Shown piece by piece: positions 6,261-51,812 of a DNA stretch of 64,000 nt (position 1 is its first letter; every line of letters begins with the position of its first letter). A program made the position numbers and the translations under genes. Location: NCBI RefSeq assembly GCF_000143415.4, contig NW_003314264.1:600774-664773 (forward strand), written 5' to 3'. The notes under the pieces are model-generated. The model did no database searches. It saw nothing but the letters and a program-made list of their open reading frames with translations, and was not told the origin of the DNA. Source of the DNA: Selaginella moellendorffii. Taxonomy: Eukaryota > Plantae > Lycopodiophyta.

Positions 6261-6293
6261 TGAAATTGCCCCATATCCAAGGCACAATTAATA

Positions 6294-29400: not shown

Positions 29401-30414
29401 TGTTCTTCTCGAAGAAGCTGGACAAGGCTCAACGAAAGTGGCCTACCCACGAGAAGGAATTGTTTGCGGTGGTCAAGGCGCTCAAGGAGTGGCGACACTA
29501 CCTTGGGAGACACTTCAAGGTTTACACGGACAATGTGGCAACGAAACACTTCTTGTCACAGCCCGACCTAAGAGGGAAACAAGGTCGGTGGGCCAATGCC
29601 TTGGCTGGGTTTGATTGCGAGATTCTGTACAAGCCTGGGAAGAGCAACATCATGGCAGATGTGCTAAGTCGAAAAGCGAGCTTGAGGTTGGCAATATCCA
29701 GCGCAACAGCAACCTTCTGGGACGATGTGCGGACAGCATATGAGAACGATGGTCTAGCACAAGAAGTGTTGCTGAGGAATCTAGAGGCGCGGGAAGCTCA
29801 CCAGAGAGGTGAGCTGCCAACGGAAGAGAAAACGGGCTATGCGGAACGCAACGGACTCATCTATTACAAGCAAACGAGGGTGTATGTTCCAGAAGGGGAA
29901 CTAAGGAAGGTGGCCTTAGAAGAGTGTCATGACGGACCTCTTGCGGGACACGGCGGAGTGCCCGAGACGATGGGCTTACTCAAAAGGAAGTACCATTGGC
30001 CAGATATGGCTAAGGACGTCCAAGACTATGTAAAGACATGTCCAACATGTCAGCAGGTAAAAGCCGTGACTAAGGCTAGTGGGGGCTTGTTGCAAAGCAT
30101 CCCAATTCCAGATCGCCCGTGGAAATGTCTTACGATGGACTTCATCACGGGACTCCCCCCAAGCGAGGGGTTTGATGCGATATTCGTGGTAGTGGACCAA
30201 TTTTTGAAAATGGCACATTTCATACCCACCACAACGGAGGTGGATGCGGAAGGTGTGGCGAAGCTGTTCTTCGAACAAGTGGTTCGAGTGCGGGGAAGAC
30301 CGGAAGAGATCATCTCAGATCAAGATAAGATCTTCACCAGTAGGTTCTGGAGGACTTTGCTAGAACAGTATCGCACCAAGTTGAAATTCAGCACAGCCTA
30401 TCACCCACAGACAG

Positions 30415-30460
30415 GTATGGGGTATTAAGTCAAGTTGTTGGCACTAACACTTCTTGACAG
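30415..30460 (+). other. 46-nt spliceosomal intron in the integrase core (outer copy)
   Basis: GTATGG...CACTAAC...GACAG; removal restores YHPQT-D-GQTERVN. Confidence 0.88.
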
Positions 30461-30878
30461 ACGGACAAACGGAAAGGGTGAATAGGCAGCTGGAGGATTA
30501 TTTGCGATGCTATGTCTCGGGAGACCAGACCGATTGGGTAAGTCATTTGGGACTTGCGGAAATGTGTTATAACAACTCACCACATTCGAGTATCGGGGTG
30601 AGTCCATGGGAAGTCATCAATGGGCGAGCTATTGAAGGTCCTGTGGAACTCAGCGTGGCCGAGTATCATGGAGAGTTGCCCGCAGTGGAGGCATTCACGG
30701 CGGAAAGACTCAGCATTTGGAATCTAGTGAGGGATTCCTTGGAACGGGCTCAACAAAGGCAAACCAAATACGCGAACCAGAAGCGTCGGGATGTAGAGTT
30801 CCAAGCTGGGGAGAAGGTGTGGCTGAACACCAAGAACCTCAGACTACCAAGTGGGATCAGTCGAAAGTTGACCCAAAG

Positions 30879-30930
30879 GTAAAGATGCATGTATTCCTGT
30901 AAATGAATTGATCTTGAGTTCCTTAAGCAG
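30879..30930 (+). other. 52-nt spliceosomal intron in the integrase GPY/F region (outer copy)
   Basis: AG|GTAAAG...AAGCAG|G; removal restores RKLTQR-FAGPYEI. Confidence 0.88.
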
Positions 30931-31531
30931 GTTCGCGGGGCCTTACGAGATTGAGGCACGAATCGGTAAAGTGGCTTACCGACTCCGACTTCCTCGAGAG
31001 ATGGGGAAGATGCACCTAGTGTTCCACGTGAACTTACTCAAGCCGTACTTTGAGGATCTGCTTCGCAAGGACCAAGTGAGACCTTTACCTGAGGTTATCC
31101 AAGGGGAAGAGGAATACGAAGTCGAAGCCATCCTCAATGCGCGCAAGAGTAAGTGACCAGGACGCGAGGTGAGAGAGTTCCATGTGAAGTGGAAAGGATT
31201 TCCACACTGTGAAGCAACATGGGAACCGGAGGAGAACCTAGCGAACGCGCGAGATCTAGTGGAGGAATTTCTGCAAGGCAGAACTCTATGTACTTATGCA
31301 AAATTCAATTAAAAATATCAATTTGCAAAGTTGAGCAAGTGGCATATGTTGGGACCCGAAGGCGCGCCGAAGGTAAGCTAATTAGCATGGGTTGGATAGG
31401 TCGACCAGGCGTAGGGCACTACGCCCGACTCCCCACGGGGATGTCGAATCCGTAGACGTATTCTACGGAGGTTGGGTTCGAGTCCCAACCCCCTAGTAAA
31501 GCAAGGCTGGGTTCAAGTCCCGACCCCATAC

Positions 31532-34500: not shown

Positions 34501-36737
34501 TTCTGGAACATACACCCTCGTTTGCTTGTAATAAATGAGTCCGTTGCGTTCCGCATAGCCCGTTTTCTCTTCCGTTGGCAGCTCACCTCTTTGGTGAGCT
34601 TCCCGCGCCTCTAGATTCCTCAGCAACACTTCCTGTGCTAGACCATCGTTCTCATATGCTGTCCGCACATCGTCCCAGAAGGTTGCTGTTGCGCTGGATA
34701 TTGCCAACCTCAAGCTCGCTTTTCGACTTAGCGCATCCGCCACGATGTTGCTCTTCCCAGGCTTGTACAAAATTTCGCAATCAAACTCGGCCAAGGCGTT
34801 GGCCCACCGACCTTGTTTCCCTCTTAGGTCGGGCTGTGACAAGAAGTGTTTCGTTGCCACATTGTCCGTGTAAACCTTGAAGTGTCTCCCAAGGTAGTGT
34901 CGCCACTCCTTGAGCGCTTTGACCACCGCAAACAATTCCTTCTCGTGGGCAGGCCACTTCCGTTGAGCCTTGTCCAGCTTCTTCGAGAAGAACGCTACCG
35001 GATGGTTGTCTTGCTTCAAAACTGCGCCCAACGCAAAGTCCGAAGCATCCGTTTCTACCTCAAAGTCCTTACCAAAGTCTGGTAATGCCAATACGGGAGC
35101 CTTCCTCAACTTCCCTTTGAGGTGGACGAATGCCGCCTCGCATTCCACTGTCCACACCATCTTCCCTTTTCCTGTTTGGTCCGTTAAGGGCAGGGCTACT
35201 CTCGAATAGTGTCTGATAAACTTTCGATAGTAGTTGCATAGCCCCAGGAATGCCCTCAACTCGTGTACATTGGATGGTCGCTCCCATTCCTGGATCGCTT
35301 GGACCTTCTCCGGGTCCACCTTGAGCCCGTCCTGGCCCACCACATGCCCGAGAAACTTTACCTCTTGTTGAGCAAAGTCACATTTGCTCTCTTTAGCATA
35401 CAGCTTGTGTTCCCTTAGTTTCTCAAACACCTTCGCCAAGTGTTCGGCATGCTCCTCTAGCGTCTCGCTATAGATCAGGATGTCGTCGATATAGATGACC
35501 ACGAAGTGATCCAGATAGGGTACAAAGACGTGGTTCATTAGCGCCAAAAACGTTGCCGGCGCATTACATAGCCCGAAGGGCATCACCAGAAACTCAAAGC
35601 TCCGATACCAAATTGTAAGCCACAAATTTTTCCTTTCCACTTTGCCAGCTTACCTCGCGTATCTGTCCAACACTGCCTTGGCTTTTGCTAAGTTCCCTCG
35701 CCAAGGTTCTCGCCTATGGTACCAGCTCCTACTTGGTTTCAGCTACTCACTGCACGAGCAACGGAGTGTTAGCCATCCTTCCACGGATTCCCAAATCACT
35801 CCCAATCCCCCTCCCCGGGTTAGACTGGACTTAAGGTTCGGCTACACTCCCCACAAGCACAAGCAGCCAAGCACACCAAGCTTCCAGGTTCCTAACATCC
35901 CTTGGTACCACAAGACTTGATCATGGGACCCTCTAAATCCCAAGTCTTGAGTGCAACACTTGCTTCGGGACGCCGGGGCGAAACACCGTGGCCTAGCGGC
36001 CCGGTATGGGTACCTCTCGCCCCCCACTTCCATCCCGAAAGAAAGCCCAAGCCCCTAGGAAGGGCGAGGACCAATGAGCCGCATGGTACTCAAGTGGGGC
36101 ACCATTCCACATGAGCCGGGAGCACCGCAATCGGTTTCCCTTTCGGGAGTGGGAGCTGCTCTTGAGCACTTCCTTGGATGGCCCCTCCGGCACCATCCAA
36201 GTCCATGCTCACTCCCACCCAAGGCCCCTCGGTCCCAGTCTCAACCTCAAGTCGGTTTGGAAGCCCAACTGGAGAGTCCCTTCAAAACTGGTTCCTGGAC
36301 CTCACTATCCCTACTATACTTTTGGAACCCCCTGCAGCCCCCCCCCCCTGGGAGACGCACGCTTTGGGCTTTCACCCCTTGACCCGTATTAGTATTTGGA
36401 CTTAGCCTCTGGCTCGATCTCGGACCCGATTTCGGATCCGACTTCGGATTCGGGTTCGGACTCGATCACGGACTCGATCTCGGACTCGATCTCGGACCCG
36501 ACCTCGGACTTGACCTCGGACTTGGTCTTGGACCCGATTTCGGATCTCGGACTCCGTCTCGAACTCGGTCCCCGAGTCGGTCTCGGACTCGATTCCGGAC
36601 TCTATCTCGAACTCGGTCCTAGAGTCGGTCTTGGACTCGATCCTCGAGTTGGTCCCATCCGATGAACTCTTTGTCATTTCGGCCAAGCATTTGGGGATCC
36701 TTTAGCCAACGAAATCGCGGGGAGTCAGTTCCTTACA
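31532..36737 (-). mobile_element. Inner, inverted, internally deleted family-B chromovirus
   Basis: LTRs at 31532-32679 and 35614-36737; perfect TSD CATAC (31527-31531, 36738-36742); PBS fused directly to RT; PPT at 32680-32693. Confidence 0.95.
33083..35600 (-). pseudogene. Truncated pol (partial RT, RNase H, integrase, chromodomain) of the inner element
   Basis: YIDD, VETDASDFALG, VVVDRFSK, ISDRD and a complete chromodomain; same introns at 33935-33980 and 33465-33516; one TGA at ~33531. Confidence 0.93.
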
Positions 36738-36926
36738 CATACTAGGGCGTGGTGAGGTTAGGGGTATAGGGACACCTATATTCCGTTGTCATGGGCTCTT
36801 GGCCGGGGAGGCTAACTTAGGCACACTACTAAGTGGGGGGATGCCCCCGGAGACATGGTCAACAAGTCGTAGGATAAAACGAGACGTTCGATGTGGGCAT
36901 CGAACTTCTTCTATGGGTGATGGAGT

Positions 36927-38083
36927 TGTAAGGAACCGACTCCCCGAGATGTTGTAGGCTAAAGGATCCCCAAAAACTTGACCAAAATGACAAAGAGTTC
37001 ATCGGATGGGACCAAGTCGAGGATCGAGTCCAAGACCGACTCTAGGACCGAGTTCGAGATAGAGTCCGGAATCGAGTCCGAGACCGACTTGGGGACCGAG
37101 TTCGAGTCCGAGTTCGAGACCGAGTTCGAGACGGAGTCCGAGATCCGAAATCGGGTCCGAGACCAAGTCCGAGGTCGAGTCCGAGGTCGGGTCCGAGATC
37201 GGGTCCGAGATCGAGTCCGAGATCGAGTCCAAGACCGAATCCGAAGTTGGATCCGAAATCGGGTCCGAGATCGAGCCAGAGACTAAGTCCAAATACTAAT
37301 ACGGGTCAAGGGGTGAAAGCCCAAAGTGTGCGTCTCCCGGGGGGGGGGGGCTGCAGGGGGTTCCAAAAGTATAGTAGGGATAGTGAGGTCCAAGAACCAG
37401 TTTTGAAGGGACTCTCCAGTTGGGCTTCCAAACCGACTTGAGGTTGAGACTGGGACCGAGGGGCCTTGGGTGGGAGTGAGCATGGACTTGGGTGGTGCCG
37501 GAGGGGCCATCCAAGGAAGTGCTCAAGAGCAGCTCCCACTCCCGAAAGGGAAACCGATTGCGGTGCTCCCGGCTCATGTGGAGTGGTGCCCCACTTGAGT
37601 ACCATGCGGCTCATTGGTCCTCGCCCTTCCTAGGGGCTTGGGCTTTCTTTCGGGATGGAAGTGGGGGGCGAGAGGTACCCATACCGGGCCGCTAGGCCAC
37701 GGTGTTTCGCCCCGGCGTCCCGAAGCAAGTGTTGCACTCAAGACTTGGGATTTAGAGGTCCCATGATCAAGTCTTGTGGTACCAAGGGGTGTTAGGAATC
37801 TGGAGGCTTGGTGTGCTTGGCTGTTTGTGCCTGCGGGGAGTGTAGCCGAACCTTAAGTCCAGTCTAACCCGGAGAGGGGGATTGGGAGAGATTTGGGAAT
37901 CCGTAGATGGATGGCTAACACTCCGTTGCTCGTGCAGTAAGTAGCTAAAACCAAGTAGGACCAAGTAGGAGCTGGTACCATAGGCGGGAACCTTGGCGAG
38001 GGAACTTAGCACAAGCCAAGGCAGAGTTGGTCGGATAGACAAGGTAAGCTGGCAAATTGGAAAGGAAAAAATTGTGGCTTACA
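36927..38083 (+). repeat. Outer 3' LTR (family B), mosaic
   Basis: Preceded by PPT ATGGGTGATGGAGT; TG...CA ends. Confidence 0.95.
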
Positions 38084-40716
38084 CCAGCATAATCCTACAA
38101 AAGCAAAATTAATAAAGAATTCTGTAACATTACTAAAATTCTTACCCAAACTCTCATTCCATCGGTTGAAATAAGTTTGCAGGAACATGAGATGGTCTAA
38201 AGTAATCACCACATCGATATGGATAGACCTCATGGACGTTCCAGGTTGCAACCCAATGTGAAATATCCTTCTTGAGGTATAGAGCAAAACCACAACATAG
38301 ACTCTGGTTGTGCTATGGATTAGATACATTGAGAATTCCTATATCTTCCATGGACTCAAAAAGGTGTTTATAAAACCACACCGCGCACTCAAAGAGTTCT
38401 CTCCACAAATGCTCTATAGGCTGTAAAACAAATTTGATTTAGTCCTTATTTGGAAAAACTTTAATGCTGTGAGTACCTGGTTACATGTTGATGTCCCACA
38501 TATGAAGCTCCTAGCTGTAGGACCCCAACAGCGGACCATGTCCCTCTCAACCTCATTGTGTTCTGGAGCATTGTCGCTTCGGATGTGCTTGGGCCTTACA
38601 AATCAACGAACAGCCTGTGCATATGTGTTGAATATTGCATGGGATTTTTTGGAGGTAATTAGCTCGCAAGCTACAATATAATGAGTTGCCCGGAAAACAA
38701 TGGCACGTACATCGAAACCATAGCTTACAAGCTTGCAATATGCTACAATAAGCATATTACCACATGTGTTGACAAAAAAAAAGAAATGAAAGAATACTCA
38801 CAATCCATATGGCAAAGTGCATATGCCTCGTCGTTCTTATAAATCCATTGTCGAATCCTTGTCATGTGCCTTTGTTCCAGCCTACTGGGATCATGAGTGG
38901 CTAAAGCCTCACAAATTTGGCATCGGCAAAACTGGTATCCTCCAGTTCGACAGCTAGATTGGGAATTGATAATCCCCCAGTTTGTGCCACCTCAATTCAT
39001 GGCATTGTTATTTCGAACGTGATGAAGTACCTCTTCGGGTGGTACTTTGTAATATACACCTCTACAATTTAGATCAACAAGCTGCATCTATTTGTATAGT
39101 GTTGGCTTAGAAATTCTAAGATAGCATGCGAGGTAAAAGCAGTAGTCTTAGTCTTGAGGATTGTCAGGTGCATCCAAGTGCCAAATGCAGCTAGACTACC
39201 GAATGCCCTCGATTGCAAAAAATTATAGAAAGCCTAGAAACGTGCAAATCATGAATTTAGAAGGCTAGAAACTAAGCAAACCTCTAGGAGAGCATCATTG
39301 TCACTATCCATACTGGAACCGCAGTCTGAATCACTAAAATTGGATGGAAGGCCATCCATGTTGTCTTCCTCGTCTTCCAGTAACCTAGATGAAAAAGTTT
39401 CAGTGACACAAATTTGAAGTAAACTAGCGAGGGAACTATACTCATGGTAAGAACTTGAAAGTCTATAGAGAGCAATCGAGTAGTAAATCAAAGCTAGTTC
39501 CAACACTGCCCACGAAAACATTTGAAACCAATCACTAGCAAACCAAGTTAACTTCCACATCTGCTACCAAGAAACATGTGCTTTCCATCGCACTTTAGGG
39601 TTAATTTCTTAGTGGGGCAGCTTGCACCCTGCTGCCATGACCAGGCGCTAAAGCAAGGAAGCATCTCCTAAACCCTATGACCTAATGAATCCCTATGTCA
39701 TGGGGTCAAACTTGATGATATGTGACATCTATGTATAGAACATTGTTCATATTATGGGGACATCATCAACCCATCGGGCCAGCATCCATGGGGTATCCAT
39801 GAGGGATCCAAATGACATTTAATGCCAAACCAATAGAAAACTGCCACATGGACACTGTATTGTGAGTGAAATTTGCTACAGTAACACTCACCCTTTTACA
39901 AATTGCACACCATAGCTTGTTTAAGCAGCTTTTATGTATAGGTATGCTCATCCCTCTAGACATTGTGAATAGGGCTTCAGTCACATTATTTCAATTTAAG
40001 GTTTTTAGGTTTTTTTGCTATTTTGTAAGAGCTGCTCTCTTTCTTTAGAGTGTTAGATGGACTCTTCACATGGTATTAGAGGCATAATGCTTTAGACATT
40101 AGGTGTCATCTCTATCCTCTTGGAGAAATGGAGCAATGAATTTCCTTGATGCAAAATTCTGGTTTATGAGGTGGGGATTTTGGCTTGTGGTGTCTAGAAT
40201 GACAAAATGATAAAAGTTGATAAAGGTTTGTGGGTTTATTTTTTATTGCTTGGCTTGTTGCCACACATTGCCATTTACAGTTGCATTGTGTGGCAAAATC
40301 ATCTATACTAACAATAAAATCAGTTTTCAACAATTATACAAATGCATATATGTGGTGAGTGTAAGCAATCTTGAGTTTGAGTTTTTATTACTACAAGTGG
40401 TTTTTAAGATTGCATATTTGAGACTTTTCCTTTTTGTTTCATACTTTTTAATTTTTTTTTCCTTCCCTTTATTTTTATTTTCTTTCTTTTTACATTTACT
40501 TCCATCACTTTGGCCTTCCCATCAATGTTTCTGTTCAATATTTTTATTTTGCTCCTTTATTTCTCAAATCCCTCCAACAATCTTTATATTATAGCAATTG
40601 ACTAGCTCAAGAAAGAGTATTCTAATCTCTTCAACTTTGAATTATTATCCTCAAGCAAAAGCCAAAATTGGCATTGCTTTGAAAGTGCAAGCTTGTGGAC
40701 ATAAATTTGCCATCAA

Positions 40717-40944
40717 ATGAGGAAGACTGGAGGATGGAGTGCTGCAAAGATACTAATTTTAGAGATGCTAGCCAAGATCAAGAAGAAGGATCCCAGCATG
40801 TACAAGCCAAAGGTGAAGTTTTCCGATAACAATGGTGATGAAATCCAGGAAGAGAAGGCTTTGAAGGAGAGGAAGAAACCAATGTACTTGAAAGATGTTC
40901 TGGCTAAGCAAGTTCTGGAAAATCCTGAGGGGGACAAGGATTGA
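40717..40944 (+). pseudogene. KRI1-like exon fragment, copy 3
   Basis: Same motif, KKPMYLKDVLAKQ. Confidence 0.6.
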
Positions 40945-40964
40945 AATCCTCCACAACACTCACT

Positions 40965-42609
40965 TCATTTATCTGCAGCATCAGGATCCAAAATTCTAAT
41001 ACTTTCAAGGTCCACCCCCAGCATGAAAGCTCGGCTGGAAGGTCGTCTATGTAGCTCAGCAAAAGAGCCAGCCACATTGTCCTCGAGGGATTGTCAATGA
41101 AACATTTGCCATTGATAAAGACGACCTTCTAGGAGGTGTTCTTCCAAAGTTGCCAAAGATATCCAGCCACAGTAGCAAGAGCAGTGGTCTGGAGGAAGGT
41201 TGTCATTATCCAAAGTGCCGTGTCTCAAGGCCGATACGAAACTTTTTATCTCCGTAAGAGTGAGCGACCCATGTACATGTATGTTTTACTCCATTCCAGA
41301 GAAAGCGGAAGTATGGAGCTCCCGAAAAGTCGCATGGCTTGTCCAGTCAGTGCCATCGTCAGCAAAATCTGCGGTCAGGTTCTCGTTCAGCTTCTTGGCC
41401 CAGGCGATCTTGTCTAACACAAAAAATTATGGCCTAGACATCATTTTTACCAGGCACCTAAGAATCGGCTGGAGGAAGTCCCGCTGCTGGCGCTGATGCT
41501 GTGAGAGGCACAATAAAGTCTATGGAGGAATGGCCACAGAATTAAACACAGCCAAAGGGCAAACGGGGGTGAGAATGACCACAAGGATGCGGAGATTACC
41601 AGATATCCACACAGAAAGAAAGAAACAGATTCAGGAAGCAAAAATCCTTAACCGTGACCAGACAGGGAAAGCAAAGCAGGACAGTGGAGCCGCTCCGGGA
41701 TAAAGAGTTGCTGCTGCTCCGGGTGAAAGAGAGGCTGCTGCGGGAGAGGAGAACTCGGTTAGTCATCTCTTCCATGTGTGGTTATGGTCAGGGATTTCGC
41801 GACACAGATCTGAGAGACGAAGGGGTACTCGACAGAGAGGGCTACCAGATTAGCAGCGACGAAATTTGAAAGAAAAGGCATCGCGGAATGACCAAGTAAA
41901 ACACAAGACAGACATGAAAAGCAAACAAAGGGGCTTTGGAGGAACGCACAGACTTGTGAGCAGAACTGAGCAAACTATAGTGTCAGGCTACCAGTCATCC
42001 CAAAAAGAAGACACCCAACTAAACAGACAGCATTAAAGTAGCATCCAGAACTGGACAAATGGAATACCAAGAACTGGACAGAAAATGGGCTTTCCCAATT
42101 GCTTACCAGATCCGTGCACTGCAACATTCAGAACAAAACAAAGTTAGTATTAGATCTAGAAGAAAAAACCAGGGTCTCAACAGCCATAGCCATACAAGGA
42201 CGACCAAGGGAGCATGCGTCAGCATAGCCAAAAGCCACACTTCCAGCAACCCAAAATAAAAGCGAATTGAAGCCACCTCTGGCAAAATCCTTAACCATGG
42301 CCGAAAGCAGCCATAGCCACATGGAACCACACACACAGCAAAACGCCCCAAATCGAGGGGGAAAGCTAAATACACAAAGAATGACTTACCATTACATTGG
42401 AGGAGGAGGAGTTCCTTCTTCCGCAGCTGTAATTTTTCCTTCCGCAGCTGTTCTTTTTCCTTCCGCAGCTGCTCTTCCTTCTTCTGCCAATAGTCCGCCA
42501 GAGATAGATTGTCACTCTGAAAGGCAGAGAGAAAAGATTTCCCAGCCGCTTGGATCTGCGGCTCAAGAAGCCCGATTTGAGCCTCCACCTTAGCCAATTC
42601 CTCGTCCAT
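40965..42609 (-). pseudogene. Crinkler-like pseudogene, copy 3
   Basis: MDEELAKVEAQI...KKEEQLRKEKEQLRKEKLQLRKKELLLLQ plus the same NTPase-like exon. Confidence 0.55.
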
Positions 42610-42797
42610 TTCGTTAGTTGAAACCCTCGCCGCCGCGCGCTGGAATCGATGATCCGGAGAGCGATCAAGAGCGACAGTGGCGCCCTAGAATCGTCAGGGA
42701 CCGCACGATTTTCATCCGACGGCCCGGTGGTTTAGACCACTAACTCAATTATAAACACAAGAGACAAAAAGTGAAAACTTAGCCACAATTTTGTTTG

Positions 42798-42851
42798 TAT
42801 GGCATGCAATTCATAAAAGGGTGGATTTTACAACGGTGGATTTCATTCACA
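42798..42851 (+). repeat. Left TIR, copy 3
   Basis: TATGGCATGCAATTCATAAAAGGGTG...GATTTCATTCACA. Confidence 0.88.
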
Positions 42852-43589
42852 CTAGGTGTATGTGTACTATTGGTCCATGTGTATCAAAACACAAGCATAG
42901 AATATTTTACGAATATCCAATCCTTATGCCCCAAATGGGCATCATGCTTATAACAATGACCCATGCTATGTATGGAATGGCGCTATTCATGGCCCATATA
43001 CCCATTCATCCCATGCATTCTAGCAAGTTGTTAATGTTGTAAACCAAATGGACAATTGACTAAATTGTATACCATATTACTTTATCTAGGGTACTATATT
43101 CTCACATCTTGCTCTTGGCGCTCATGGCAAAAGAATTAAATTATCCTTTTCTGGCACACCTCTTTTAACATAGTGTTCATAACAAGTGTAAGTGGACTCC
43201 ATTTAGCTCCATTGCAAAGCCATGGATATATACTATCTGGAGTCATGTCTCTAATGCATCCCATTGAGTTTATATTTCGTTGCCATTGATTTCCAGTGTA
43301 GCTCTCTCAACACTTTAGTTTTGTACCAAGATGCTTAGAAGATTTGCATATGACTCAAAAGTAAGTTGAAGTCTAACTAATTTGATGAATTGGTGGGGTT
43401 TATATTTCAATTGTGTACTACGTAAAGGTGCATAGTGTTGATGTTTGGACCTGGAGTTCTCTCAACAAGAGCATGCTAAAGGAGATTTAGGAATGTGGAA
43501 GTTGTAATTGCATGTAGTAACATTTAGGATAACAAAAGACACTTTCAACATTTTTCAATTAAAATTTTCAATAATTTTCAAATTGGACC

Positions 43590-44424
43590 TGGAGTTATCT
43601 CAAGAGGAGCATGCTAAAGGAGATTTGAGAATATGGAAGTTGCAATTGCATGCAGTAACATTCAGGTGAGAAGAGCAATAACAATGGACACTTACAATAT
43701 TTCCAATCATAATTATTTCAAATTTTGAAATTTGTAAAAAGGGTTTCCAAGCATGGGGCAAAACTATCCAATGTATCCTGTGTGCTACAGCCAAAGAACT
43801 GGAGTTTTCAGGGATTGAAAGTTCGTACTCACTTTGGTAAGAGTATATTTGTGATAGTTTCCTATATGCTCTAACCCTTTTGCAATGTTTGAAGTTTCTA
43901 AGTTTACTCCTAGCATGGCAAACTGGAGAGGATTCTATGACTTTTTTGAGGCACAATAATGGATCCAACAAGGGATAGGACCAAGGATTCTATATAATGC
44001 CTCCTCCTCTCAAGGCTTGACAATCCCTCCAACAAGGCAACCCAAGACTACTTCTAATGTTGTGCCAATCACTGAGGGGAAAGGTCTTGCTAAAGAAAGC
44101 GATAGCAAGGGATATGTTACTACTCGAGATGCAAGCAAGGACGAGTTCACAGACCTAGAGGGTGATTTTGGTTCTACCATGAAACAAGCTAAGAGTTCCT
44201 CAAGCAAGGATGAGTATCATATAGCACCCAAGCTCAATAGTTTTGACCCAGATCCTAAATTGGGAGTTGCTTTGGAAGCTAAAGTGATTACCCTTGGTGA
44301 GGCAAGCATAAGCCAAAAGGGTACTAGGGCCCCAAATGCCTATAATGGGCATTTGTGGAATATTTTGAATATTCTTACCTTTAACTTTGTTAATGAACTG
44401 GAAAGAGTCTCTTTCAAAGTGTGA
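43590..44424 (+). pseudogene. Possible third, convergent spliced gene of the TIR transposon (function unknown); also at ~12370-13127
   Basis: Copy 2 can be spliced as ...VAIACNNIQ|GFQAWGKTIQYMLHATTEELDFSGIGSSCSLW|...; the terminal exon is open for over 100 codons in both copies (12798-13127, 44017-44424). Confidence 0.35.
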
Positions 44425-44469
44425 CACATATTTCAAGATAATTATCTATTTTTATTGTGAAAGTGTTTA

Positions 44470-47400
44470 GATTATGGTACTTCCACAACATCAACCTAAT
44501 CCATACAAGCTCTCTAGATTTTGGAGTGCCCGGGTGGATCTTGTGTTTGGTCCACTCCATTGACGTGTATGTTAAAGGGAAGAAAACTTCTCGTGTGCAT
44601 GTGGAGAACCTGGGAAATCGAGTAGATGATGTACCCTGTCTCTCAATGTGGATCCAAATAGGCTCTCCCGATCAGAACTCTAGAGAATCAACCGCAAAGT
44701 GATGGAACTTGGATAACTCTTTCAGGCTCATATTTATAAAATGTTCAAACATACAAGAGTTTTAGTTATTTGTGAAAGTAAATAGTTACCTCGAATGATA
44801 TCCACAATCCAGCTATGGAAGTTCTCTCCAAAGTCTTAATCAAAGATTAGGCAGTTGATGACCTCTACGGGAGGAATGATCATCCTTACCTGGAAGACCT
44901 GTAACAAAGCATCTCTCCCAATGAGTGAAAGCCCACCTAGCAATGCTGAACTTTTGTAAGGCCTCTGATGAGCTTCCATGCGTATTGAGTATTGGAAGCC
45001 ATCTCAGACTAAGGCTCCCACTACATTTGGCTCGATGAATAGGTGATGCCAGACCACCGCAGCCACACATGCTTCCACAGCCTGCTCATAACCTTCACCA
45101 AGTTCGGTGAGTCTAGACTCAAGCACTGTGTTGTAGTCGGTAATTGCAAGGTTCTCTAGGATGGAATCCACAGACTTGTGCTGATCACCCTCCTCCTTTA
45201 GGCTTGATGCACCTTGCAATTGGTTGAGTGCATTCCAGATATGCGGCACGTATACCTTGAGGTTCATCTCATATAGTCCTCCTCGGGCAAATCATTGGTC
45301 ATTCTCATTTAGAACCTCTCGGGCTGCAATTGCTAATATTGCAATTGTACACCCGCGAAATACTTGTGCATTACATTCGAACGCTTGGAATAGCAACCAT
45401 GCCACAAAGATAGCCTGTGCATATAGAAATGAGGAGCATATAAAACTTGTGCTTTAAACTTAACTTACCACATCCCGCTCATCTTGTCACAACGTCCTAG
45501 AATGCATTGGCATCCTGGAATGCCAATACGTGGCTCCTTCCCTAAGCACAAACAGTTCACGCGTCTATAACACAAAGTTACTTTAGTGAGCCAAGTGAAA
45601 ATTAAACTTACCGATCCTGGAATTTGGTGAATACTAATGGCTTTTGCATGTGGCCCACCCACATCTATTGTGGATTCCTCCCACACCAAAGCTCCTCCAA
45701 TCTCAGACGTATAGACCACTTTGTAATCTGGTATGCGGAGATTAGTATTGAAGGTGAACTAGAAACAATTAAATTCATTGTTTGGTGCAATGAGGGAACT
45801 CCAATTCATAGGCAATCCATTGCTTACCAGAATGCAAGATGGCCTCAAACGTGTACAAGCAAGTTTGTATAGCTGAAACATGGCCTTTTCGATGCAAAAA
45901 CAAGAGAACTTATAATACAGTGTTTCAGCAATGTCAAATAATTGTCTCAATTGTTGTGCAGCTGCCCAATTCTTAGGTAGGTCCCTACACAAAACAATAA
46001 GATGGTACTAAGTGCTAAAATATAAATACACGTACCTCTTCTCAATGAACCATGCTATTATGGACTCAACAATTAAAAGAGGCACATTGATACTTACTTT
46101 AGCAAGGAGTTGTTGGATTGTGTTGTTACAAAACACATCCTCGTACTGTGCATCTGAAAGGCTAAATTTAAGGAGAACACTCTCCCAATCCTGCCAATGA
46201 GGCATGGCTTGGCTGAAAAAGCACGCGCGGAAGAAATATTTCACCGCCAGCCCGATGGAACTCAAGGTGTTTATCAATAGTGTCTAGCATATATTCGTCA
46301 CTTGTGCTCTCCACGCTAAAGCAACCAAGAAGCTTGTGTTTCAACTATTGCACCTGTGATAGAACTTTAGCATCCCTCTATGCCCTCATCTCAAGGGCTA
46401 TGGTGGCATCCTGTAAGGCAAAAACCTCCTCATACTACAGCATGATGAAGTTAGCACTATCTTGAGTGGTTAACTGAACAACTTCATTAAATGCATTAGT
46501 GGCATCAATCCATCATTGTTGACGCTCCAACAATCTACATGCAAATGTTAGTTCAATTTTGAATGGCATAATTTTTAATTATCTTACTCTACTGTAGAAA
46601 AGTTGTCAAGCAACTCCATAAGAGTAAGTGAAGTGGAGCTCCTTCCCTCTAGAAAGGGGGGTGGAGGCACACCATGGTCTTCAAGGCCTCCACCATCATT
46701 GTCATAGGCATATTTACACTCAAAAATTAGAAAATGAAGAAAATAATCATTTATGTTAATACTTTTTACCAGCTGTATAGCCTGGAGCCACTATCTCTAG
46801 TGACAAGGATGTCTCCAGAGATCTTTACTGCAGTTCATCCCCACCATCACCTTGTTCTTCGACTCCAGTGATGTCCATGTTGTCTTGTGTGGGGAGAGTT
46901 TCTTTTGGTAATGGAAGAATATCCTCTTCATCTGTAGAGTCTTCTTCTTTATTATTCTCATTTTGGTTTGGTTCCTGCATGGGGAGAAATGGCTTTATCA
47001 CCAAGGGATCATCATTTGCAGTCAAGGTATTTGTAGCAACTACAACTGCAAAGACCACAACATATATTTGTGAGGAGGGAACTTAAAAAACAAAATAACT
47101 TATATTCATAAATATTCTTCTCTTTGAATGCTTGGGCTTGTTTTTGATAACTTAGCCAATGTTTGTCAATATGATGCTCCATAATATTGTATAGGTATAT
47201 TATTGTTACCTGGTTGCTATTGGCCTTGTTTGTTATAGCTCCCCATGATGTTAGAGGAGGCCAGTAGCAAGGCCAAATAGAGCTGAGGCCAAATTTTGCA
47301 AACTCGGCATGGGCCTCACCACCATTGGACTACCTTGCATGTTGGACAAATGCTTCTGGGTTGGTCATGGATGAAGGTTGGATTCTTGAGGCTTGGAGTG

Positions 47401-48730
47401 ATAGTAGAATCGCATGTTGGGCCGTGCCGGGCTAGAAAGGAATACTGGAGTATAAGCCACCCCATATGAGACACTCTGGGAGGTCCACTACCAGCTCATC
47501 AAGTTCTGTCACCTTCACAGATGGCTCTCTTTTCTACCCATACAAGTGTGCATGCCAAGTCTTCGGGATTGCAATCCACTTGGTGATAAGAACTGTGGTG
47601 AACGGCCAGGGGACCAAAGGTGTCATAGATGACATCCCACCAATGACTTTGGATTGACTGCCATGATGTCCATGACGACAAGATAAGGACTGCCGATTGT
47701 TATCAGCTTAGGTGTGCACTGCAGCCACAAGTGGTCAGAGAGTCTAGCACAGTGAAATGAAAATGAGTTAAACAAATCCAAAGAAAAAAAAAATGAAGAG
47801 TGCATGGGGTCATGTTATACCTGTGGCTCATATGGCAGCCCGCCTTGAGTGTCAGCTTGAACATATTTGGATGTCGAAGCTCCACTAAATGATGATGTTG
47901 ATCCTTGGGAGTAGTTGTGGAATGCTAATAGGGAACTATAAGCTCGCTGGTGTGGCAGCATTGTCAACTCACCCTACGTAGAAAAACATATGGAAAAATG
48001 ACGGGTACAAATGAAAAACTTACCGAGCTAGACCACTTGTTGCTTCGGGAGGTAGATGGGCCAGGTACTGGCACTTGTACCAGTAGATGGAGTTGCAAGA
48101 GTTGTAGCGGCTGGTGGAGTTGCGGGGCTAGTAGCAGTGGCACTATATGGGGTTCCATGAGCACGTCCTGTAGTTGGTGTTGGTGGCAGCATTCTAGATT
48201 GGATGACACCGTAGGCATGAGGCATCCGGACTTGCTTGTTTCAGACACTCGGGCTGCTACTTTCCAAGGAAGGCAAGGAGAAGGAAACATGCTGGAGGTT
48301 TTGCATATGTTGTAGTGTATGCAATGTTAGGCGGCACTCTATTTGCTCAAATGCAGTCAGGAGCTGTAGATGGGATGCTGTTGGAGTTGATGTCCTTGTT
48401 GCGAAGCTTGGAAAATCAAGTGGTTGGCGTGTGTCTCGTAGGATTGTTAGCTGTACCAATTGCAAAACATTGAGTGCTTAGTTGCGTGCTCACAAGGTGT
48501 TTCCTGCATAGTGTCTATTGGTATTGAGGCGTGCAGCATTCTTGCTTCGAGCCTAGAAACCACAAGGGATTGGTTATGCAAACCTAATCGAGGAGAAGCT
48601 ACCCACCATCACAACTGTGGCGCTCTTGCTTGGGCGGTGGTCCTACGATTAGGGGAGTGTGCACTAGAAGCCTTTCCTCCGGTTAGATGACACGAATCGA
48701 TTGGAAGAATGAACAAACCATTGACAAAAT
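44470..48730 (-). pseudogene. Multi-exon HECT E3 ubiquitin-ligase-like gene, copy 3
   Basis: N-lobe KVVY...EESTIDVGGP (45651-45720, cf. GExxxDxGG). C-lobe ELSKFHHFAVDS...TSSTRFPRFSTCTREVFFPLTYTSMEWTKHKI (cf. LPxAHTCxxxLxLPxYxSxE), with the Cys codon at 44597-44599. Exon boundaries are approximate. Confidence 0.72.
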
Positions 48731-48879
48731 CATGTCATAAAATGAAATTGCCCCATATCCAAGGCACAATTAATAATGGTGGGACTTTGTGTAAACCCTA
48801 ATCCCGTGGGAACCCTTAATTTGAACAAATCAAGAATTGAATTTAAATTTGAAATATATACTAAAGAACACTCAATTTT

Positions 48880-50504
48880 CTCCGAGTATGGCTAAGTATA
48901 ATTTTTCAAAAGCTCATCACTTCACCGATGTTACTGTAGGCAATTGCTTGTCCAAGTTGAGTCCCTCCCGATGCATAAAAAATGCCTGGTTCTGAACAGT
49001 GCTAAGAGCCTGTAAGGTAGCCAAACACAATGAAATAGATTTAAAAAAATTGTTCTATTTTTGTTCTAAAGATTACCTTTGACAGAGTTGCACCTTCAAC
49101 ATTGGAGAGAAATGGTCTAGGAACGTTTTTAATATCTTTTCCACCAACAGCCGGCATAATTCTACAAAAGCACAATTTATAAAGAATTCTGTAACGTTAC
49201 CAAAATTTTTACCCAAGCTCTCATTTCATCGGTTGAAATAGGTTTGTAGAAATATGAGATGGTCTGAAGTAATCATCACATCAATACGAATGGACCTCAT
49301 GGAGGTTCCAGGTTGCAACCCAATGTGAAATATGCTTCTTGAGGTACGAAGCAAAGACACAACATAGACTCTAGTTGTGCACATCGAGAATTCCCATATC
49401 TTCCATGGACTCAAAAAGGTGCTTATAAAACCACACCATGAACTCAAAGAGCTCTCTCCACAAATGCTCTATGCGCTATAAAACAAATTTGATTTAGTCC
49501 TTATTTGGAAAAACTCTAATGCTGTGAGTACCTGGTTACGTGTTGATGTCCTACGTATGAAACTCTTAATTGCAAGACCCCAATAGTAGACTATGTCGCT
49601 CTCAACCTCATTGTGCTCTAGAGCATTGTCGCTCCAAATGCACTTGGGCCTTCCAAATTGACAGATAGCCTATGTATATGTGTTGAATATTGCATAGGAT
49701 TCTTTGGAGGTAGCTAGCTTACAAGCTACAATATAATGAGTTGCCCCACAAATAATGGCATGTACATAGAAACCATAGCTTACAAGCTTGCAATATGCTA
49801 CAATAATCTTGTTCCCACATGTGTTAACAAAAAAGCAGAAATGAAAGAATACTCTCAATCCACATGGCAAAGTGCATAAGCCTCCTTGTTCTTGTCCGTC
49901 GTTGAATCCTTGTCATATGCCTCTGTTCTAGTCTACTTGGATTGTGAGTGGCTAAGGCCTGGCGTCGGCTAAACCAGTATCCTCCAATTCGATAGCTAGA
50001 TCGAGAATTGATAATCCCCCAATTTGTGTCACCTCAATTCATGGCATTGTTAGTTTGAACATGATGAAGTGCCTCTTTGAGTGGTACTCTATAATATACA
50101 CCTCTCCAATTTCGATTGATCATGTATTTGTATAGTGTTGGCTTAGAAATTCTAAGATAGCATGCGAGGTAAGCAGTAGTCTTAGTCTCGAGGATCTTCA
50201 AGTGCATCCAAGTGCCAAATGCGGCTGGACTACTGAATCCCCTCGATTGCAAAAAATTATAGAAGGCCTAGAAACATATAAATCATGAATTTAGGAGGCT
50301 AGAAACTAAGTAAACCTCTAGGAGAGCATCATTGTCACTATCCATATTGGAACCACAATCCGAATCACTAAAATTGGATGGAAGGCCGTCCATCTTGTCT
50401 TCCTCCACGTCTTCTAGTAAAGTTGGAAAAAAAAGCTTTAATGATACAAATTTGAAGTAAACTAGGGAGGGAACTATACTCATGGTAGGAATTTGAAAGT
50501 CCAT
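48880..50504 (-). pseudogene. DDE transposase, copy 3
   Basis: LLE|AFYNFLQSRG...RISKPTLYKYM; YCKLVSYGFYVHAIICGATHYIVACKLATSK; IEHLWRELF; WNLHEV; multiple stops. Confidence 0.82.
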
Positions 50505-50857
50505 AGAGAGCAATCGAGTAGTAAATCAAAGCCACTTCCAACACTACCCATAAAAACATTTAAAACCAATCACTAGCAAACCAAGTTACTTTCCACATTT
50601 GCTACCAAGAAACATGCCGAATAACAAAGCACTAAAGCAGGGCACTAAGACAAGGAAGCATCTCCTAAACCCTATGACCTGATGAATCCCTATGTTATGG
50701 GGTCAAACTTGATGATATGTGGCATATATGTAGAACACATTATTCATATTATGGGGATATCATCGACCCATTAGGCAAGCATCCATGGGGTATCTATGAG
50801 GCATCCAAATGACATTTAATGCCGAACCAATAGAAAACTGCCATATGGACATTGTAT

Positions 50858-50911
50858 TGTGAGTGAAATCTATTGCAGTAACACTCACCCTTTTACAAAT
50901 TGCATGCCATA
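50858..50911 (-). repeat. Right TIR, copy 3
   Basis: Reverse complement reads TATGGCATGCAATTTGTAAAAGGGTG...GATTTCACTCACA. Confidence 0.88.
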
Positions 50912-51812
50912 ATTTGTTTAAGCAGCTTCTATGTATAGGTATGCTCATAAATCCCCACTTCATAAACCAGAATTCTACAACAAAGAAATTCATTGTTCCA
51001 TTGCTCCATTTCTCCAAGAGGATAGAGATGACACCTAATGTCTAAAGCACTATGCCTCTAATACCATGTGAAGAGTCTCCATCTAACACTCTAAAGAAAG
51101 AGAGCAGCTCTTACAAAATAGCAAAACTAAAAACCTTAAATTGAAGAAATGTGACTCAAGCCACTTGGCTTGACTCTAACAGTGGTAGGACAAGATGGCA
51201 TTGGTGGCTGCCACATTCTCTACTTTGGTGGCAGGAAGACCCTTTACTCACAACCTCCAGAGGGTGGCTTGTGGTGTCTGGAATGACAAAATGATAAAAG
51301 TTGATAAAGGCTTGTGGGTTTATTTTTTATTGCCTGGCTTGTTGCCACATATTGCCATTTACAGTTTCATTGTGTGGCAAAATCATCTGTACTAACAACA
51401 AAATCAGTTTTCATTTTTTATAGCAATAACTATACAAATGCATATGTGTGGTAAGTGTAAACAATCTTGAGTTTGAGCTTTTATTACTGCAAGTGGTTTA
51501 TAGGATTGCATATTTGAGACTTTTCCTTTTTGTTTCATACTTTTTAAATTTTTTTTCCTTCCCTTTATTTTTATTTTATTTCTTTTTACATTTACTTCCA
51601 TCACTTTGGTCTCCCCATCAATGTTTCTGTTCAATATTTCTATTTTGCTCCTTTATTTCTCAAATCCCTCCAATAGTCTTTATATTATAGCAATTAACTA
51701 GCTCAAGAAAGAGTATTCTAATCTCTTCAACTTTGAATTATTATCCTCAAGCAAAGGCCAAAATTGGCATTGCTTTGAAAGTGCAAGCTTGTGGACATGA
51801 ATTTGCCATCAA

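What the first reader, a model, noticed from the sequence alone, without database searches (positions are those of the whole stretch)
42798..50911. 8.1-kb TIR DNA transposon encoding an IS3EU/IS481-type integrase plus a HECT ubiquitin ligase, in an apparent land-plant genome
Seen: 54-bp TIRs starting TATGG and a probable 5-bp TSD (GTTTG vs ATTTG/GCTTG). Two co-oriented spliced genes are invisible in the ORF track: an HTH + D(HMD)-D(RSD)-E(IEHLW) integrase-core transposase and a HECT-like protein. Three copies occur here. This is not hAT, MULE, CACTA, Harbinger or Mariner. From memory (unverified), IS3EU elements have TAY...RTA ends and are described mainly from animals and fungi. A plant lineage with host-style mini-introns may be undescribed.
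Basis: partly seen in the sequence, partly recalled or inferred. Interest (0 to 1): 0.9.

Follow-up and report, generated by a model that had tools for sequence, protein, structure and literature searches.

The report
Dead spikemoss GingerRoot transposon with HECT gene
This is a long-dead copy of a cut-and-paste jumping gene of a kind already known from spikemosses (IS3EU/GingerRoot), notable because the family also carries a very divergent ubiquitin-ligase-like (HECT) gene and a small RNA:DNA-hybrid-binding gene; the "three copies" in this window are one old insertion copied along with its surroundings.

Summary
The window is Selaginella moellendorffii scaffold GL377568.1. The terminal inverted repeats at 42798-42854 and 50855-50911 are real. 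In six other loci of the same genome, homology to this element stops exactly at those ends and the flanks all differ. Four of these copies have perfect 5-bp target duplications, so it is a genuine mobile element of about 8.1-8.8 kb.

On the minus strand it carries a decayed HTH plus DD35E integrase-core transposase; sister copies hit Pfam rva_4 and rve above threshold. It also carries a long gene ending in a very divergent HECT-like domain with the catalytic Cys codon kept. A small opposite-strand gene has an RNase H1-type hybrid-binding domain.

Copy C has 21 in-frame stops and 6 frameshifts. The three local copies share both flanks: they are units of an 11.1-kb tandem segmental duplication, not separate insertions.

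The superfamily (IS3EU/GingerRoot) was described in Selaginella lepidophylla, lycophytes and bryophytes in 2019, so the "undescribed plant lineage" claim fails. The 5-bp target duplication (against the usual 6 bp) and the HECT and hybrid-binding genes are not in the papers I could search.

This scan has already found the same family at several other loci of this genome.

The parts
42798..42854 (.). Terminal inverted repeat at the low-coordinate end. This is the 3' end relative to the transposase and HECT genes. It starts TATGGCATGC.
   Evidence: Homology to independent copies L001, L002, L004, L005 and L007 ends exactly at 42798.
50855..50911 (.). Terminal inverted repeat at the high-coordinate end, ending ...GCATGCCATA.
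   Evidence: Homology to independent copies ends at 50911.
42793..42797 (.). Left copy of the 5-bp target-site duplication (GTTTG).
   Evidence: The 5-bp length is fixed by perfect TSDs in L001 (GAATG), L002 (GCTCA), L004 (TTTTT) and L007 (AAAAC).
50912..50916 (.). Right copy of the target-site duplication. It reads ATTTG here and GCTTG in units A and B; each is one change from GTTTG.
48944..50465 (-). Transposase pseudogene with an N-terminal HTH and a DD35E integrase core (rva_4/rve type). D1 is at 49858-49860, D2 at 49628-49630 and E at 49467-49469. It carries 7 in-frame stops, a 4-nt deletion and an 84-nt deletion.
   Evidence: tblastn of P0015 and P0016. Pieces of this copy give only weak Pfam hits. 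Exons of sister copies score rva_4 52.7 and 57.5 bits and rve 35.6 bits. Breaks are listed and catalytic codons.
47105..48570 (-). Ser/Thr/Pro-rich coding region between the transposase core and the HECT part. It is probably the N-terminal part of gene 2. Gene models disagree on whether it is fused to the transposase.
   Evidence: It is open for 192 and 219 codons in the majority consensus. This copy has 4 stops and 2 frameshifts here.
44494..47182 (-). HECT-like gene remains, equivalent to SELMODRAFT_407700 (P0002, 747 aa). An unexplained helical N-terminal half runs from 47182 to about 45760. The HECT-like domain runs from about 45758 to 44494, with the catalytic Cys codon at 44597-44599. 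This copy has 10 stops and 3 frameshifts. The annotated model on this very copy is P0001 (SELMODRAFT_404841).
   Evidence: Pfam HECT scores 21.4 and 20.7 bits. Breaks are, the Cys.
43738..44328 (+). Third gene, on the opposite strand. It has an RNase H1-type hybrid-binding domain (Cauli_VI) split by an intron, followed by an acidic/Ser-rich tail. This copy has two in-frame stops.
   Evidence: A 151-aa gene is called at this place in L001 and L004. Pfam PF01693 scores 25.6 bits on L002:11336-11449(-). tblastn onto the window is.
43445..43724 (.). Internal 138-bp x 2 tandem repeat upstream of the third gene.
   Evidence: The repeat is also seen in the other loci.
11523..39914 (.). Tandem unit B copy of the same insertion. 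Its element pieces are 11523-16150, 23482-25325 and 38081-39914. They are split by nested insertions at 16151-23481 and at 25326-38080; the second holds Ty3/gypsy genes.
4043..8549 (.). Tandem unit A copy. It lacks the equivalent of 42798-46542. It is sister to copy B with 100/100 support.
39915..42797 (.). The roughly 2.9-kb spacer of the 11.1-kb tandem unit. Other spacers lie at 8550-11522, 50912-53601 and, in part, 2195-3303. They are 92-95% alike and are absent from the flanks of the unlinked copies.

Best explanation
The stretch 42798-50911 is a dead, full-length copy of a multi-copy TIR DNA transposon of Selaginella moellendorffii. It belongs to the IS3EU/GingerRoot type.

Shown:
- The termini are TA...TA, with TIRs of about 55 nt whose outer 26 nt are nearly perfect.
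- The target duplication is 5 bp.
- The family carries three genes. Gene 1 (minus strand here) is an HTH plus DD35E integrase-core transposase. Gene 2 (same strand) is a long protein with a Ser/Thr/Pro-rich N-terminus, an unexplained helical middle and a very divergent HECT-like C-terminal domain, with the catalytic Cys 34 residues from the end. Gene 3 (opposite strand) is a small protein with an RNase H1-type RNA:DNA-hybrid-binding domain.
- All genes contain 47-60-nt GT..AG introns in the annotated models.

Inferred mechanism:
- The transposase binds the TIRs and subterminal repeats through its HTH.
- It cuts and joins the ends into a target cut with a 5-bp stagger, as integrase, IS3 and IS481 enzymes do.
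- The HECT-like and hybrid-binding proteins were accessory genes of the active element. The HECT protein most likely ubiquitinated a host factor or the transposase itself. This function is not shown.

Local history, shown:
- A single insertion at GTTTG was copied together with about 3 kb of flank into an 11.1-kb tandem array of at least three element-bearing units (A, B, C) plus a fourth spacer.
- The array was later hit by nested retrotransposons (unit B), a deletion (unit A) and a 316-bp inversion.
- All copies then decayed. Copy C has 21 in-frame stops and 6 frameshifts.
For: - TIRs.
- Shared flanks and 11,097-bp period.
- Organism and scaffold: (L006 is 100% identical to window 34836-56205, GCA_000143415.2 GL377568.1); protein names are.
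- Independent copies with different flanks, where homology stops at 42798 and 50911.
- TSDs: GAATG, GCTCA, TTTTT and AAAAC are perfect; ACTAA/ACTAT is 4 of 5.
- Transposase: rva_4 at 52.7, 57.5 and 54.6 bits and rve at 35.6 bits on sister exons, HTH_17 at E 9e-4; rva_4 at 51 and 41 bits in P0015 and P0016. No H2C2 zinc finger or chromodomain was found, unlike the LTR integrase in the same window.
- D-D-E codons.
- HECT: Pfam PF00632 at E 2.2e-4 and 3.7e-4 on profile positions 213-301 of 306. 57 of the 60 nearest ESM-Atlas clusters are HECT (score 0.95, 200 of 256 features). Atlas-model TM is 0.54-0.60 over about 300 residues to HECT clusters. The Cys codon is kept in all 7 copies that cover it.
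- Hybrid-binding domain: PF01693 at 25.6 bits.
- A majority consensus of 8 copies has 0 stops in 1,341 codons, whereas every single copy is broken.
- Gene models of the family lie on at least 13 scaffolds.
- Literature: PMC6839031 and PMC10045372.
Against: - The TSD is 5 bp, not the 6 bp (6-8) that characterises GingerRoot/IS3EU. The TIRs are shorter than the 100-150 bp reported for S. lepidophylla.
- Placement of the transposase next to reference IS3EU/GingerRoot sequences was not tested, because no reference sequences were at hand.
- HECT scores stay below Pfam's gathering threshold. Sequence searches of PDB gave no HECT hit. My own AlphaFold model was unusable (pLDDT 32).
- There was no signal of purifying selection on any gene. 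The transposase showed none either, so the test had no power.
- There were no RNA reads: 1 of 27.6 million at 85% identity or more, with no positive control.
- Whether genes 1 and 2 are one transcript or two is unresolved, since the annotated models disagree.
Confidence: 0.85

Rival explanations
1. The HECT-like gene, and perhaps the hybrid-binding gene, is passive cargo: a host gene captured by a GingerRoot element and carried along without any role in transposition.
For: GingerRoot elements of S. lepidophylla often carry captured gene fragments (PMC6839031). I found no signal of purifying selection on the HECT region. Close relatives were found only in S. moellendorffii.
Against: - It is a complete C-terminal HECT-like domain, not a fragment, with the Cys at the canonical distance from the stop. 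It has its own long N-terminal region and at least 9 introns.
- It is present at the same place in every copy that covers that region.
- It is fully open in the family consensus.
- It is far too divergent from canonical HECT (21 bits) to be a recent capture of a host UPL gene, and no host parent appeared in three searches.
- The selection test also failed on the transposase, so it says nothing.
Confidence: 0.2
2. The C-terminal domain of gene 2 is not a HECT homologue at all; the resemblance is chance.
For: Pfam scores are under the gathering cut-off. phmmer and profile searches of PDB sequences gave no HECT hit. The AlphaFold model failed.
Against: - Two family members hit the same C-lobe part of the HECT profile, with the Cys aligned.
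- 57 of 60 language-model neighbours are HECT at score 0.95. About 1 in 100 shuffled proteins reach that score.
- All ten structural neighbour sets of the Atlas model are HECT ligases, at TM 0.54-0.60 over about 300 residues.
- UniRef already names P0002 as HECT domain-containing.
Confidence: 0.08
3. The three copies in the window are three independent insertions of an active element.
For: There are three TIR-bearing copies within 47 kb.
Against: - The left flank is identical over about 100 nt in B and C. The 37-nt right flank is the same in A, B and C, followed by the same spacer.
- The spacers are 92-95% alike and absent from unlinked copies.
- The period is 11,097 bp.
- A and B are sisters with 100/100 support.
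Confidence: 0.02
4. It is a Ginger1/Ginger2, IS481EU or LTR-retrotransposon-derived element rather than IS3EU/GingerRoot.
For: All of these have integrase-like DDE cores. A 5-bp TSD is typical of LTR elements. The GingerRoot paper found Ginger2 to be the best Repbase match of its DDE.
Against: - The termini are TA..TA, not TG..CA.
- There is no H2C2/HHCC finger, GPY/F motif, chromodomain, RT or LTRs (contrast).
- The N-terminus is an HTH.
- The best Pfam family is rva_4, the eukaryotic stand-alone integrase-core family.
- IS481EU is known from parabasalids, with TSDs of about 4, 15 or 25 bp.
Confidence: 0.04

Closest known systems
GingerRoot (Cerbin et al. 2019, PMC6839031), equivalent to the IS3EU superfamily of Repbase (Kojima and Bao 2023, PMC10045372)
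   Same: - It is a TIR DNA transposon of a Selaginella genome with 5'-TA...TA-3' termini.
- Its transposase is integrase-related DDE, without an HHCC finger or GPY/F motif.
- Its size lies within 3.9-12.9 kb.
- It is multi-copy and mostly dead or silent.
   Different: - The TSD is 5 bp, perfect in 4 independent copies, instead of 6 (6-8) bp.
- The TIRs are about 55 nt (up to about 90 with gaps) instead of 100-150 bp.
- The host species is S. moellendorffii, which the main text of that paper does not mention.
- It carries a complete HECT-like gene and a hybrid-binding-domain gene. Neither paper mentions these: there are 0 occurrences of HECT or ubiquitin in the GingerRoot paper, and no paper in the library holds both IS3EU and HECT.
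Prokaryotic IS3/IS481 insertion sequences and retroviral or LTR integrases
   Same: The catalytic core is DD35E: D, then about 57 residues, D, then 34 residues, E. IS3/IS481 also have an N-terminal HTH. Short fixed target duplications are shared.
   Different: This is a eukaryotic element with spliceosomal introns and three genes. It has no frameshifted orfAB, RT or LTRs. Whether it moves by cut-and-paste or by copy-out-paste-in is unknown.
DNA transposons with ubiquitin-system accessory genes (from my own knowledge, not checked here): ULP1-like proteases in KI-MULEs and CACTA elements, OTU protease in Ginger1
   Same: An accessory gene of the ubiquitin or SUMO system is carried beside the transposase inside the TIRs.
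   Different: Those genes are deconjugating cysteine proteases. Here the gene is a ligase-type HECT domain, which I could not find reported for any transposon.
Canonical HECT E3 ligases (plant UPL1-7, HERC, NEDD4, E6AP)
   Same: The C-terminal domain of about 350 residues has its catalytic Cys 34 residues from the C-terminus. Its nearest neighbours by language-model features and by predicted structure are all HECT.
   Different: - It is extremely divergent (21 bits against the Pfam HECT model).
- It has no recognisable substrate-binding domain.
- It is multi-copy and lies within transposon TIRs.
- Activity is untested.

Membership tests
IS3EU/GingerRoot DNA transposons | DDE (DD35E) integrase-type transposase core | tested here: met
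   Sister-copy exons score rva_4 52.7-57.5 bits (cut-off 26) and rve 35.6 bits (cut-off 32.6). The window copy keeps the HVD, WSDN and IEHLW codons but hits Pfam only weakly.
IS3EU/GingerRoot DNA transposons | No HHCC zinc finger, GPY/F motif or chromodomain; HTH-type N-terminus | tested here: met
   Pfam finds only HTH_17/HTH_22 upstream of the core and no H2C2 or chromo domain in P0015 or P0016. The Ty3/gypsy integrase in the same window hits Integrase_H2C2 at 74-77 bits.
IS3EU/GingerRoot DNA transposons | TA...TA termini with terminal inverted repeats | tested here: met
   TATGG...CCATA is seen in the window and in L001, L002, L004, L005 and L007. The TIR is about 55 nt, shorter than the 100-150 bp of S. 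lepidophylla elements.
IS3EU/GingerRoot DNA transposons | 6-bp target-site duplication ('mostly 6', 'usually 6') | tested here: not met
   The TSD is 5 bp: GAATG, GCTCA, TTTTT and AAAAC are perfect, and ACTAA/ACTAT and GTTTG/ATTTG are 4 of 5. No 6-bp reading fits. I therefore file it as a variant of the type, not as a typical member.
IS3EU/GingerRoot DNA transposons | Transposase falls in the IS3EU/GingerRoot clade in a phylogeny | not tested
   No Repbase or GingerRoot reference proteins could be fetched with these tools. The paper's supplements are not held. There is only indirect support from the rva_4 family and its eukaryotic neighbours.
HECT E3 ubiquitin ligases | HECT domain recognised above Pfam's gathering score | tested here: not met
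   PF00632 scores 21.4 bits (P0002) and 20.7 bits (P0015) against a cut-off of 23.9. Only the C-lobe is matched, at profile positions 213-301 of 306.
HECT E3 ubiquitin ligases | Catalytic Cys about 35 residues from the C-terminus | tested here: met
   In P0002 the ...RFSTCTRE... Cys is followed by 34 residues and then the stop. The codon is conserved in all 7 copies covering it; in the window it lies at 44597-44599.
HECT E3 ubiquitin ligases | Bilobal HECT fold | tested here: inconclusive
   The ESM-Atlas model of P0002 (pTM 0.48) matches HECT clusters at TM 0.54-0.60 over 294-312 residues, and 57 of 60 feature neighbours are HECT. My own AlphaFold2 model failed (pLDDT 32.5).
HECT E3 ubiquitin ligases | Ubiquitin thioester formation and transfer | not testable with these tools
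   This needs biochemistry.
RNase H1-type hybrid-binding domain (Cauli_VI, PF01693) | Domain recognised above the gathering score | tested here: met
   L002:11336-11449(-) scores 25.6 bits against a cut-off of 21 for the first half of the domain, and L004 scores 20.2 bits. The second half lies in the next exon. The window copy has two stops.
Ginger1 / Ginger2 / IS481EU | TG..CA termini with 4-bp (Ginger1) or 6-bp (Ginger2, per PMC6839031) TSD and integrase accessory motifs, or 4/15/25-bp TSDs (IS481EU) | tested here: not met
   The termini are TA..TA, the TSD is 5 bp, and there is no HHCC or chromodomain.

The most novel reading that the evidence does not exclude
A lineage of IS3EU/GingerRoot transposons makes 5-bp target duplications and has as integral, once-functional components its own HECT-type ubiquitin ligase and an RNA:DNA-hybrid-binding protein. 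On this reading the transposon brings an E3 ligase to manipulate host proteins (for example silencing, repair or chromatin factors) or to control its own transposase. Earlier notes of this scan claim that the same HECT-transposase pairing occurs in unrelated organisms. I could not test that here.
Probability: 0.5. Interest if true: 0.65.

Novelty: new variant of a known kind. Interest (0 to 1): 0.45.

Why it matters
DNA transposons that carry ubiquitin-system genes are known only with deconjugating proteases, as far as I know. A transposon family with its own HECT-type ligase and a hybrid-binding protein would point to a new way for a mobile element to interfere with its host or to regulate itself, and it would add accessory genes to the little-studied IS3EU/GingerRoot superfamily. 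The 5-bp target duplication also widens the definition of that superfamily.

The window itself adds a caution for TE annotation. Several nearby copies with identical junctions can be a segmental tandem duplication and say nothing about mobility. This particular copy is dead and the superfamily is already described in Selaginella, so the finding is of moderate interest rather than high.

Tried and rejected
1. Pfam on stop-to-stop pieces of the window copy gave only weak rve, rva_4 and HTH hits and no HECT. The copy is too decayed, so I moved to sister copies.
2. PDB sequence searches with the C-lobe piece, a family profile and P0002:560-747 found no HECT.
3. AlphaFold2 on a 6-row family alignment gave pLDDT 32.5, which is unusable, so no fold search was run on it.
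4. Three word-based homology searches (HECT region, transposase region of the fused model, largest HECT exon) and one exhaustive phmmer search found only S. moellendorffii proteins. The claim that HECT sits beside IS3EU transposases in other organisms stays untested here.
5. Two selection tests were run: pooled NG86 dN/dS against shifted frames, and synonymous fraction of shared against singleton substitutions. Neither showed a signal for any gene, including the transposase. The differences among these copies are mostly post-insertion decay, so the test has no power.
6. Three RNA-seq runs were laid on 44451-50450. One read of 27.6 million matched at 85% identity or more. There was no positive control, so this shows only that there is no evidence of expression.
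7. A 6-bp TSD reading (TTGTTT with 1- and 2-nt offsets) was rejected after the other loci showed clean 5-bp duplications.
8. The N-terminal half of gene 2 (P0002:150-385) has no convincing look-alike.
9. No inverted repeats were found flanking the 316-bp inverted segment.


Full report
**The observation.** The inverted repeat is real. Its arms lie at 42798-42854 and 50855-50911: 57 nt, 79% complementary, 8,000 nt apart. The outer 26 nt match at 24 of 26 positions. The pattern occurs three times in the window against 0 in 100 shuffles. The termini read TATGG...CCATA, and the flanks are GTTTG on the left and ATTTG on the right.

**The 'three copies'.**
- A self-comparison, the repeat families with constant 11,096-11,097-bp spacing and junction alignments show that the copies share their flanks.
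- About 100 nt left of the TIR are identical but for one base in units B and C.
- The 37 nt right of the TIR are the same in A, B and C and are followed by the same roughly 3-kb spacer.
- The window therefore holds a tandem array of an 11.1-kb unit made of the 8.1-kb element plus a spacer of about 3 kb.
- The layout is: partial spacer 2195-3303; copy A 4043-8549 (left 3.7 kb missing); spacer 8550-11522; copy B 11523-39914; spacer 39915-42797; copy C 42798-50911; spacer 50912-53601.
- Copy B is split by nested insertions at 16151-23481 and 25326-38080. The second carries Ty3/gypsy gag, protease, RT, RNase H and integrase.
- The array then runs into another retroelement.
- The spacers are 92-95% alike and do not occur beside unlinked copies.
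- In a tree, A and B are sisters (100/100) and C sits on a long branch of its own.
- So this was one insertion, later copied with its surroundings. These copies can neither prove mobility nor fix the TSD.

**Organism.** A phmmer search of all representatives with one HECT-region piece and later searches returned only proteins named SELMODRAFT_* of Selaginella moellendorffii. The locus of the 99%-identical model P0001 (SELMODRAFT_404841) is 100% identical to window 34836-56205. It lies on scaffold GL377568.1 of GCA_000143415.2.

**Proof of mobility and TSD.**
- I fetched the loci of eight other gene models.
- In L001, L002, L004, L005 and L007, homology to the window element begins and ends exactly at 50911 and 42798, and the flanks are all different.
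- The TSDs are GAATG/GAATG, GCTCA/GCTCA, TTTTT/TTTTT, AAAAC/AAAAC and ACTAA/ACTAT.
- L003 and L009 are truncated at one end. L008 shares L005's flank, so it is the same insertion, either allelic or duplicated.
- In the window the left flank is GTTTG (B and C) and the right flank is ATTTG (C) or GCTTG (A and B). Each right-hand version is one different substitution from GTTTG.
- The family thus makes 5-bp duplications. Full-length elements are 8.1-8.8 kb, and gene models lie on at least 13 scaffolds.

**Genes: overall layout.** tblastn of the annotated relatives onto copy C shows coding remains on the minus strand from 50465 down to 44494.

**Gene 1, the transposase.**
- The window pieces give only weak Pfam hits: rve at E 0.13, rva_4 at E 0.025, HTH at E 0.03.
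- Intact exons of sister copies score above threshold: rva_4 at 52.7, 57.5 and 54.6 bits (cut-off 26), rve at 35.6 bits (cut-off 32.6) and HTH_17 at E 9e-4.
- The fused models P0015 and P0016 hit rva_4 at 51 and 41 bits.
- The catalytic triad reads HMD ... about 57 residues ... RSD ... 34 residues ... IEHLW, which is a DD35E core.
- In copy C the codons are at 49858-60 (HVD), 49628-30 (WSDN) and 49467-69.
- No H2C2 finger or chromodomain is present, in contrast to the LTR integrase in the same window.

**Gene 2, the HECT-like gene.**
- It has a Ser/Thr/Pro-rich N-terminal region, a helical region with no recognisable relatives and a C-terminal domain of about 350 residues.
- This domain hits Pfam HECT at E 2.2e-4 and 3.7e-4 (21.4 and 20.7 bits), just under the 23.9-bit cut-off, on the C-lobe.
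- Its Cys lies 34 residues from the stop.
- 57 of its 60 nearest ESM-Atlas clusters by language-model features are HECT (score 0.95, 200 of 256 shared features).
- The Atlas model aligns to HECT ligases at TM 0.54-0.60 over about 300 residues.
- UniRef already calls P0002 'HECT domain-containing'.
- Direct sequence searches of PDB and my own AlphaFold model failed.
- I therefore rate the HECT homology at about 0.9, not as proven.
- The Cys codon is kept in all seven copies that cover it; in the window it is at 44597-44599.

**Gene 3, the hybrid-binding gene.** It lies on the opposite strand, at window + 43738-44328. A 151-aa gene is called there in L001 and L004. Its first exon hits the RNase H1 N-terminal hybrid-binding domain PF01693 at 25.6 bits against a cut-off of 21. 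The window copy has two stops.

**Introns and gene boundaries.** The annotated models have 47-60-nt GT..AG introns. Models disagree on whether genes 1 and 2 are fused: P0015 and P0016 fuse them, while L002 and L004 have two genes. I have no RNA evidence on this.

**State of the copy.** A majority consensus of eight copies, used only inside scripts to define frames, has no stop in 1,341 codons across the transposase, the middle region and the HECT gene. Every real copy is broken. Copy C carries 21 in-frame stops, 6 frameshifting indels and an 84-nt deletion. Three RNA-seq runs of the species gave 1 read out of 27.6 million at 85% identity or more. There was no positive control, so this shows only that there is no evidence of expression.

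**Selection.** Pooled dN/dS was no lower in the true frame than in shifted frames. Shared substitutions were no more often synonymous than singletons. This held for every gene, including the transposase. The divergence among these copies is mostly decay after insertion, so the test cannot say whether the HECT gene was useful to the element.

**Comparison with what is known.**
- GingerRoot was described in 2019 from Selaginella lepidophylla. It has a 6-bp (6-8) TSD, mostly TA..TA termini, 100-150-bp TIRs, a size of 3.9-12.9 kb and an integrase-related DDE without HHCC or GPY/F. Among plants it was found in lycophytes and bryophytes only.
- Kojima and Bao (2023) showed that GingerRoot and Repbase's IS3EU form one lineage (bootstrap 99), always with TA..TA termini and usually with 6-bp TSDs.
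- The present family matches in transposase type, missing accessory motifs, termini and host genus. It departs in TSD length (5 bp) and TIR length (about 55 nt, up to about 90 with gaps).
- I could not place the transposase in a tree with reference sequences.
- Neither paper mentions HECT or ubiquitin. No paper in the searchable library holds both IS3EU and HECT, and none describes a HECT gene in a DNA transposon.

**How it most likely worked.**
- Inferred: the HTH region binds the TIR tips and subterminal repeats, such as the 11-bp TGGATGCCCCA x 4.5 array in L001.
- Inferred: the DD35E core cleaves and joins the ends into a 5-bp staggered target cut.
- The HECT-like protein and the hybrid-binding protein were accessory genes of the active ancestor. 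A role in modifying host factors or the transposase is a hypothesis.
- The main rival is that they are old captured cargo, as GingerRoot elements often carry gene fragments.
- Against that rival: the domain is complete, with its own N-terminal region and introns; it is present in all copies; its consensus is open; and no host parent was found.

**Earlier notes of this scan.** Several earlier follow-ups on other loci of this genome reached the same reading: a dead GingerRoot/IS3EU element with a HECT gene and a small hybrid-binding gene. Their mention of GingerRoot led me to the paper, and I checked each point myself. Their claim that the HECT-transposase pairing recurs in unrelated organisms was not testable with the searches I had left. 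New here are the tandem 11.1-kb array that explains the 'three copies', the explicit 5-bp versus 6-bp TSD discrepancy across independent copies, and the inventory of breaks.

**Verdict.** This is a real but ordinary-in-kind, dead transposon of a superfamily already described in spikemosses. It has two noteworthy variant features, the 5-bp TSD and the HECT and hybrid-binding accessory genes. I score interest at 0.45 and novelty as a new variant of a known kind.

Noticed in passing
window 50949-51264 versus 8587-8897 and 39973-40180: A segment of about 316 bp, starting 37 nt outside the right TIR, is inverted in the C/D junction relative to the A/B and B/C junctions of the tandem array. I found no flanking inverted repeats.
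   Followed up: partly
window 25326-38080: A nested insertion in copy B contains two Ty3/gypsy copies head to head. The arms 28786-31533 and 32862-35609 are 97% complementary. Both carry gag, protease, RT, RNase H and H2C2-integrase ORFs.
   Followed up: partly
window 16151-23481 and 53601 to about 60325: A 7.3-kb insertion in copy B has LTR-like direct repeats at 16252-16847 and 21932-22527. A related element in inverse orientation interrupts the fourth spacer at about 53601. Fragments of it also lie at 3304-4042 in unit A.
   Followed up: no
window 17160-17457, 22812-23120, 25419-25717, 32300-32601, 36370-36635, 37005-37315: Arrays of a 12-bp tandem repeat (TCCGAGATCGAG-like, GC-rich) recur inside the retroelement LTR-like regions.
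   Followed up: no
window 88-1500 (+): A 470-aa open reading frame in a region of strong AT skew, left of the array, has no Pfam hit.
   Followed up: no
window 43445-43724; L001 5769-5817: The element has an internal 138-bp x 2 tandem repeat upstream of the third gene. In better-preserved copies it also has an 11-bp x 4.5 subterminal array (TGGATGCCCCA) about 105 nt inside the transposase-side end. These are possible transposase-binding sites.
   Followed up: partly
window 40717-41500 and 51813-52601 (+): The spacer of the tandem unit holds an annotated 182-aa gene model (L006 3605-4393) with no Pfam family on record.
   Followed up: no
L005 and L008: Two scaffolds (GL377609.1 and GL377567.1) carry the element at the same flank (…tagctagcttactaa|TATGG). 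The copies differ by large deletions. They are probably the two haplotypes of the assembly or a segmental duplicate.
   Followed up: no
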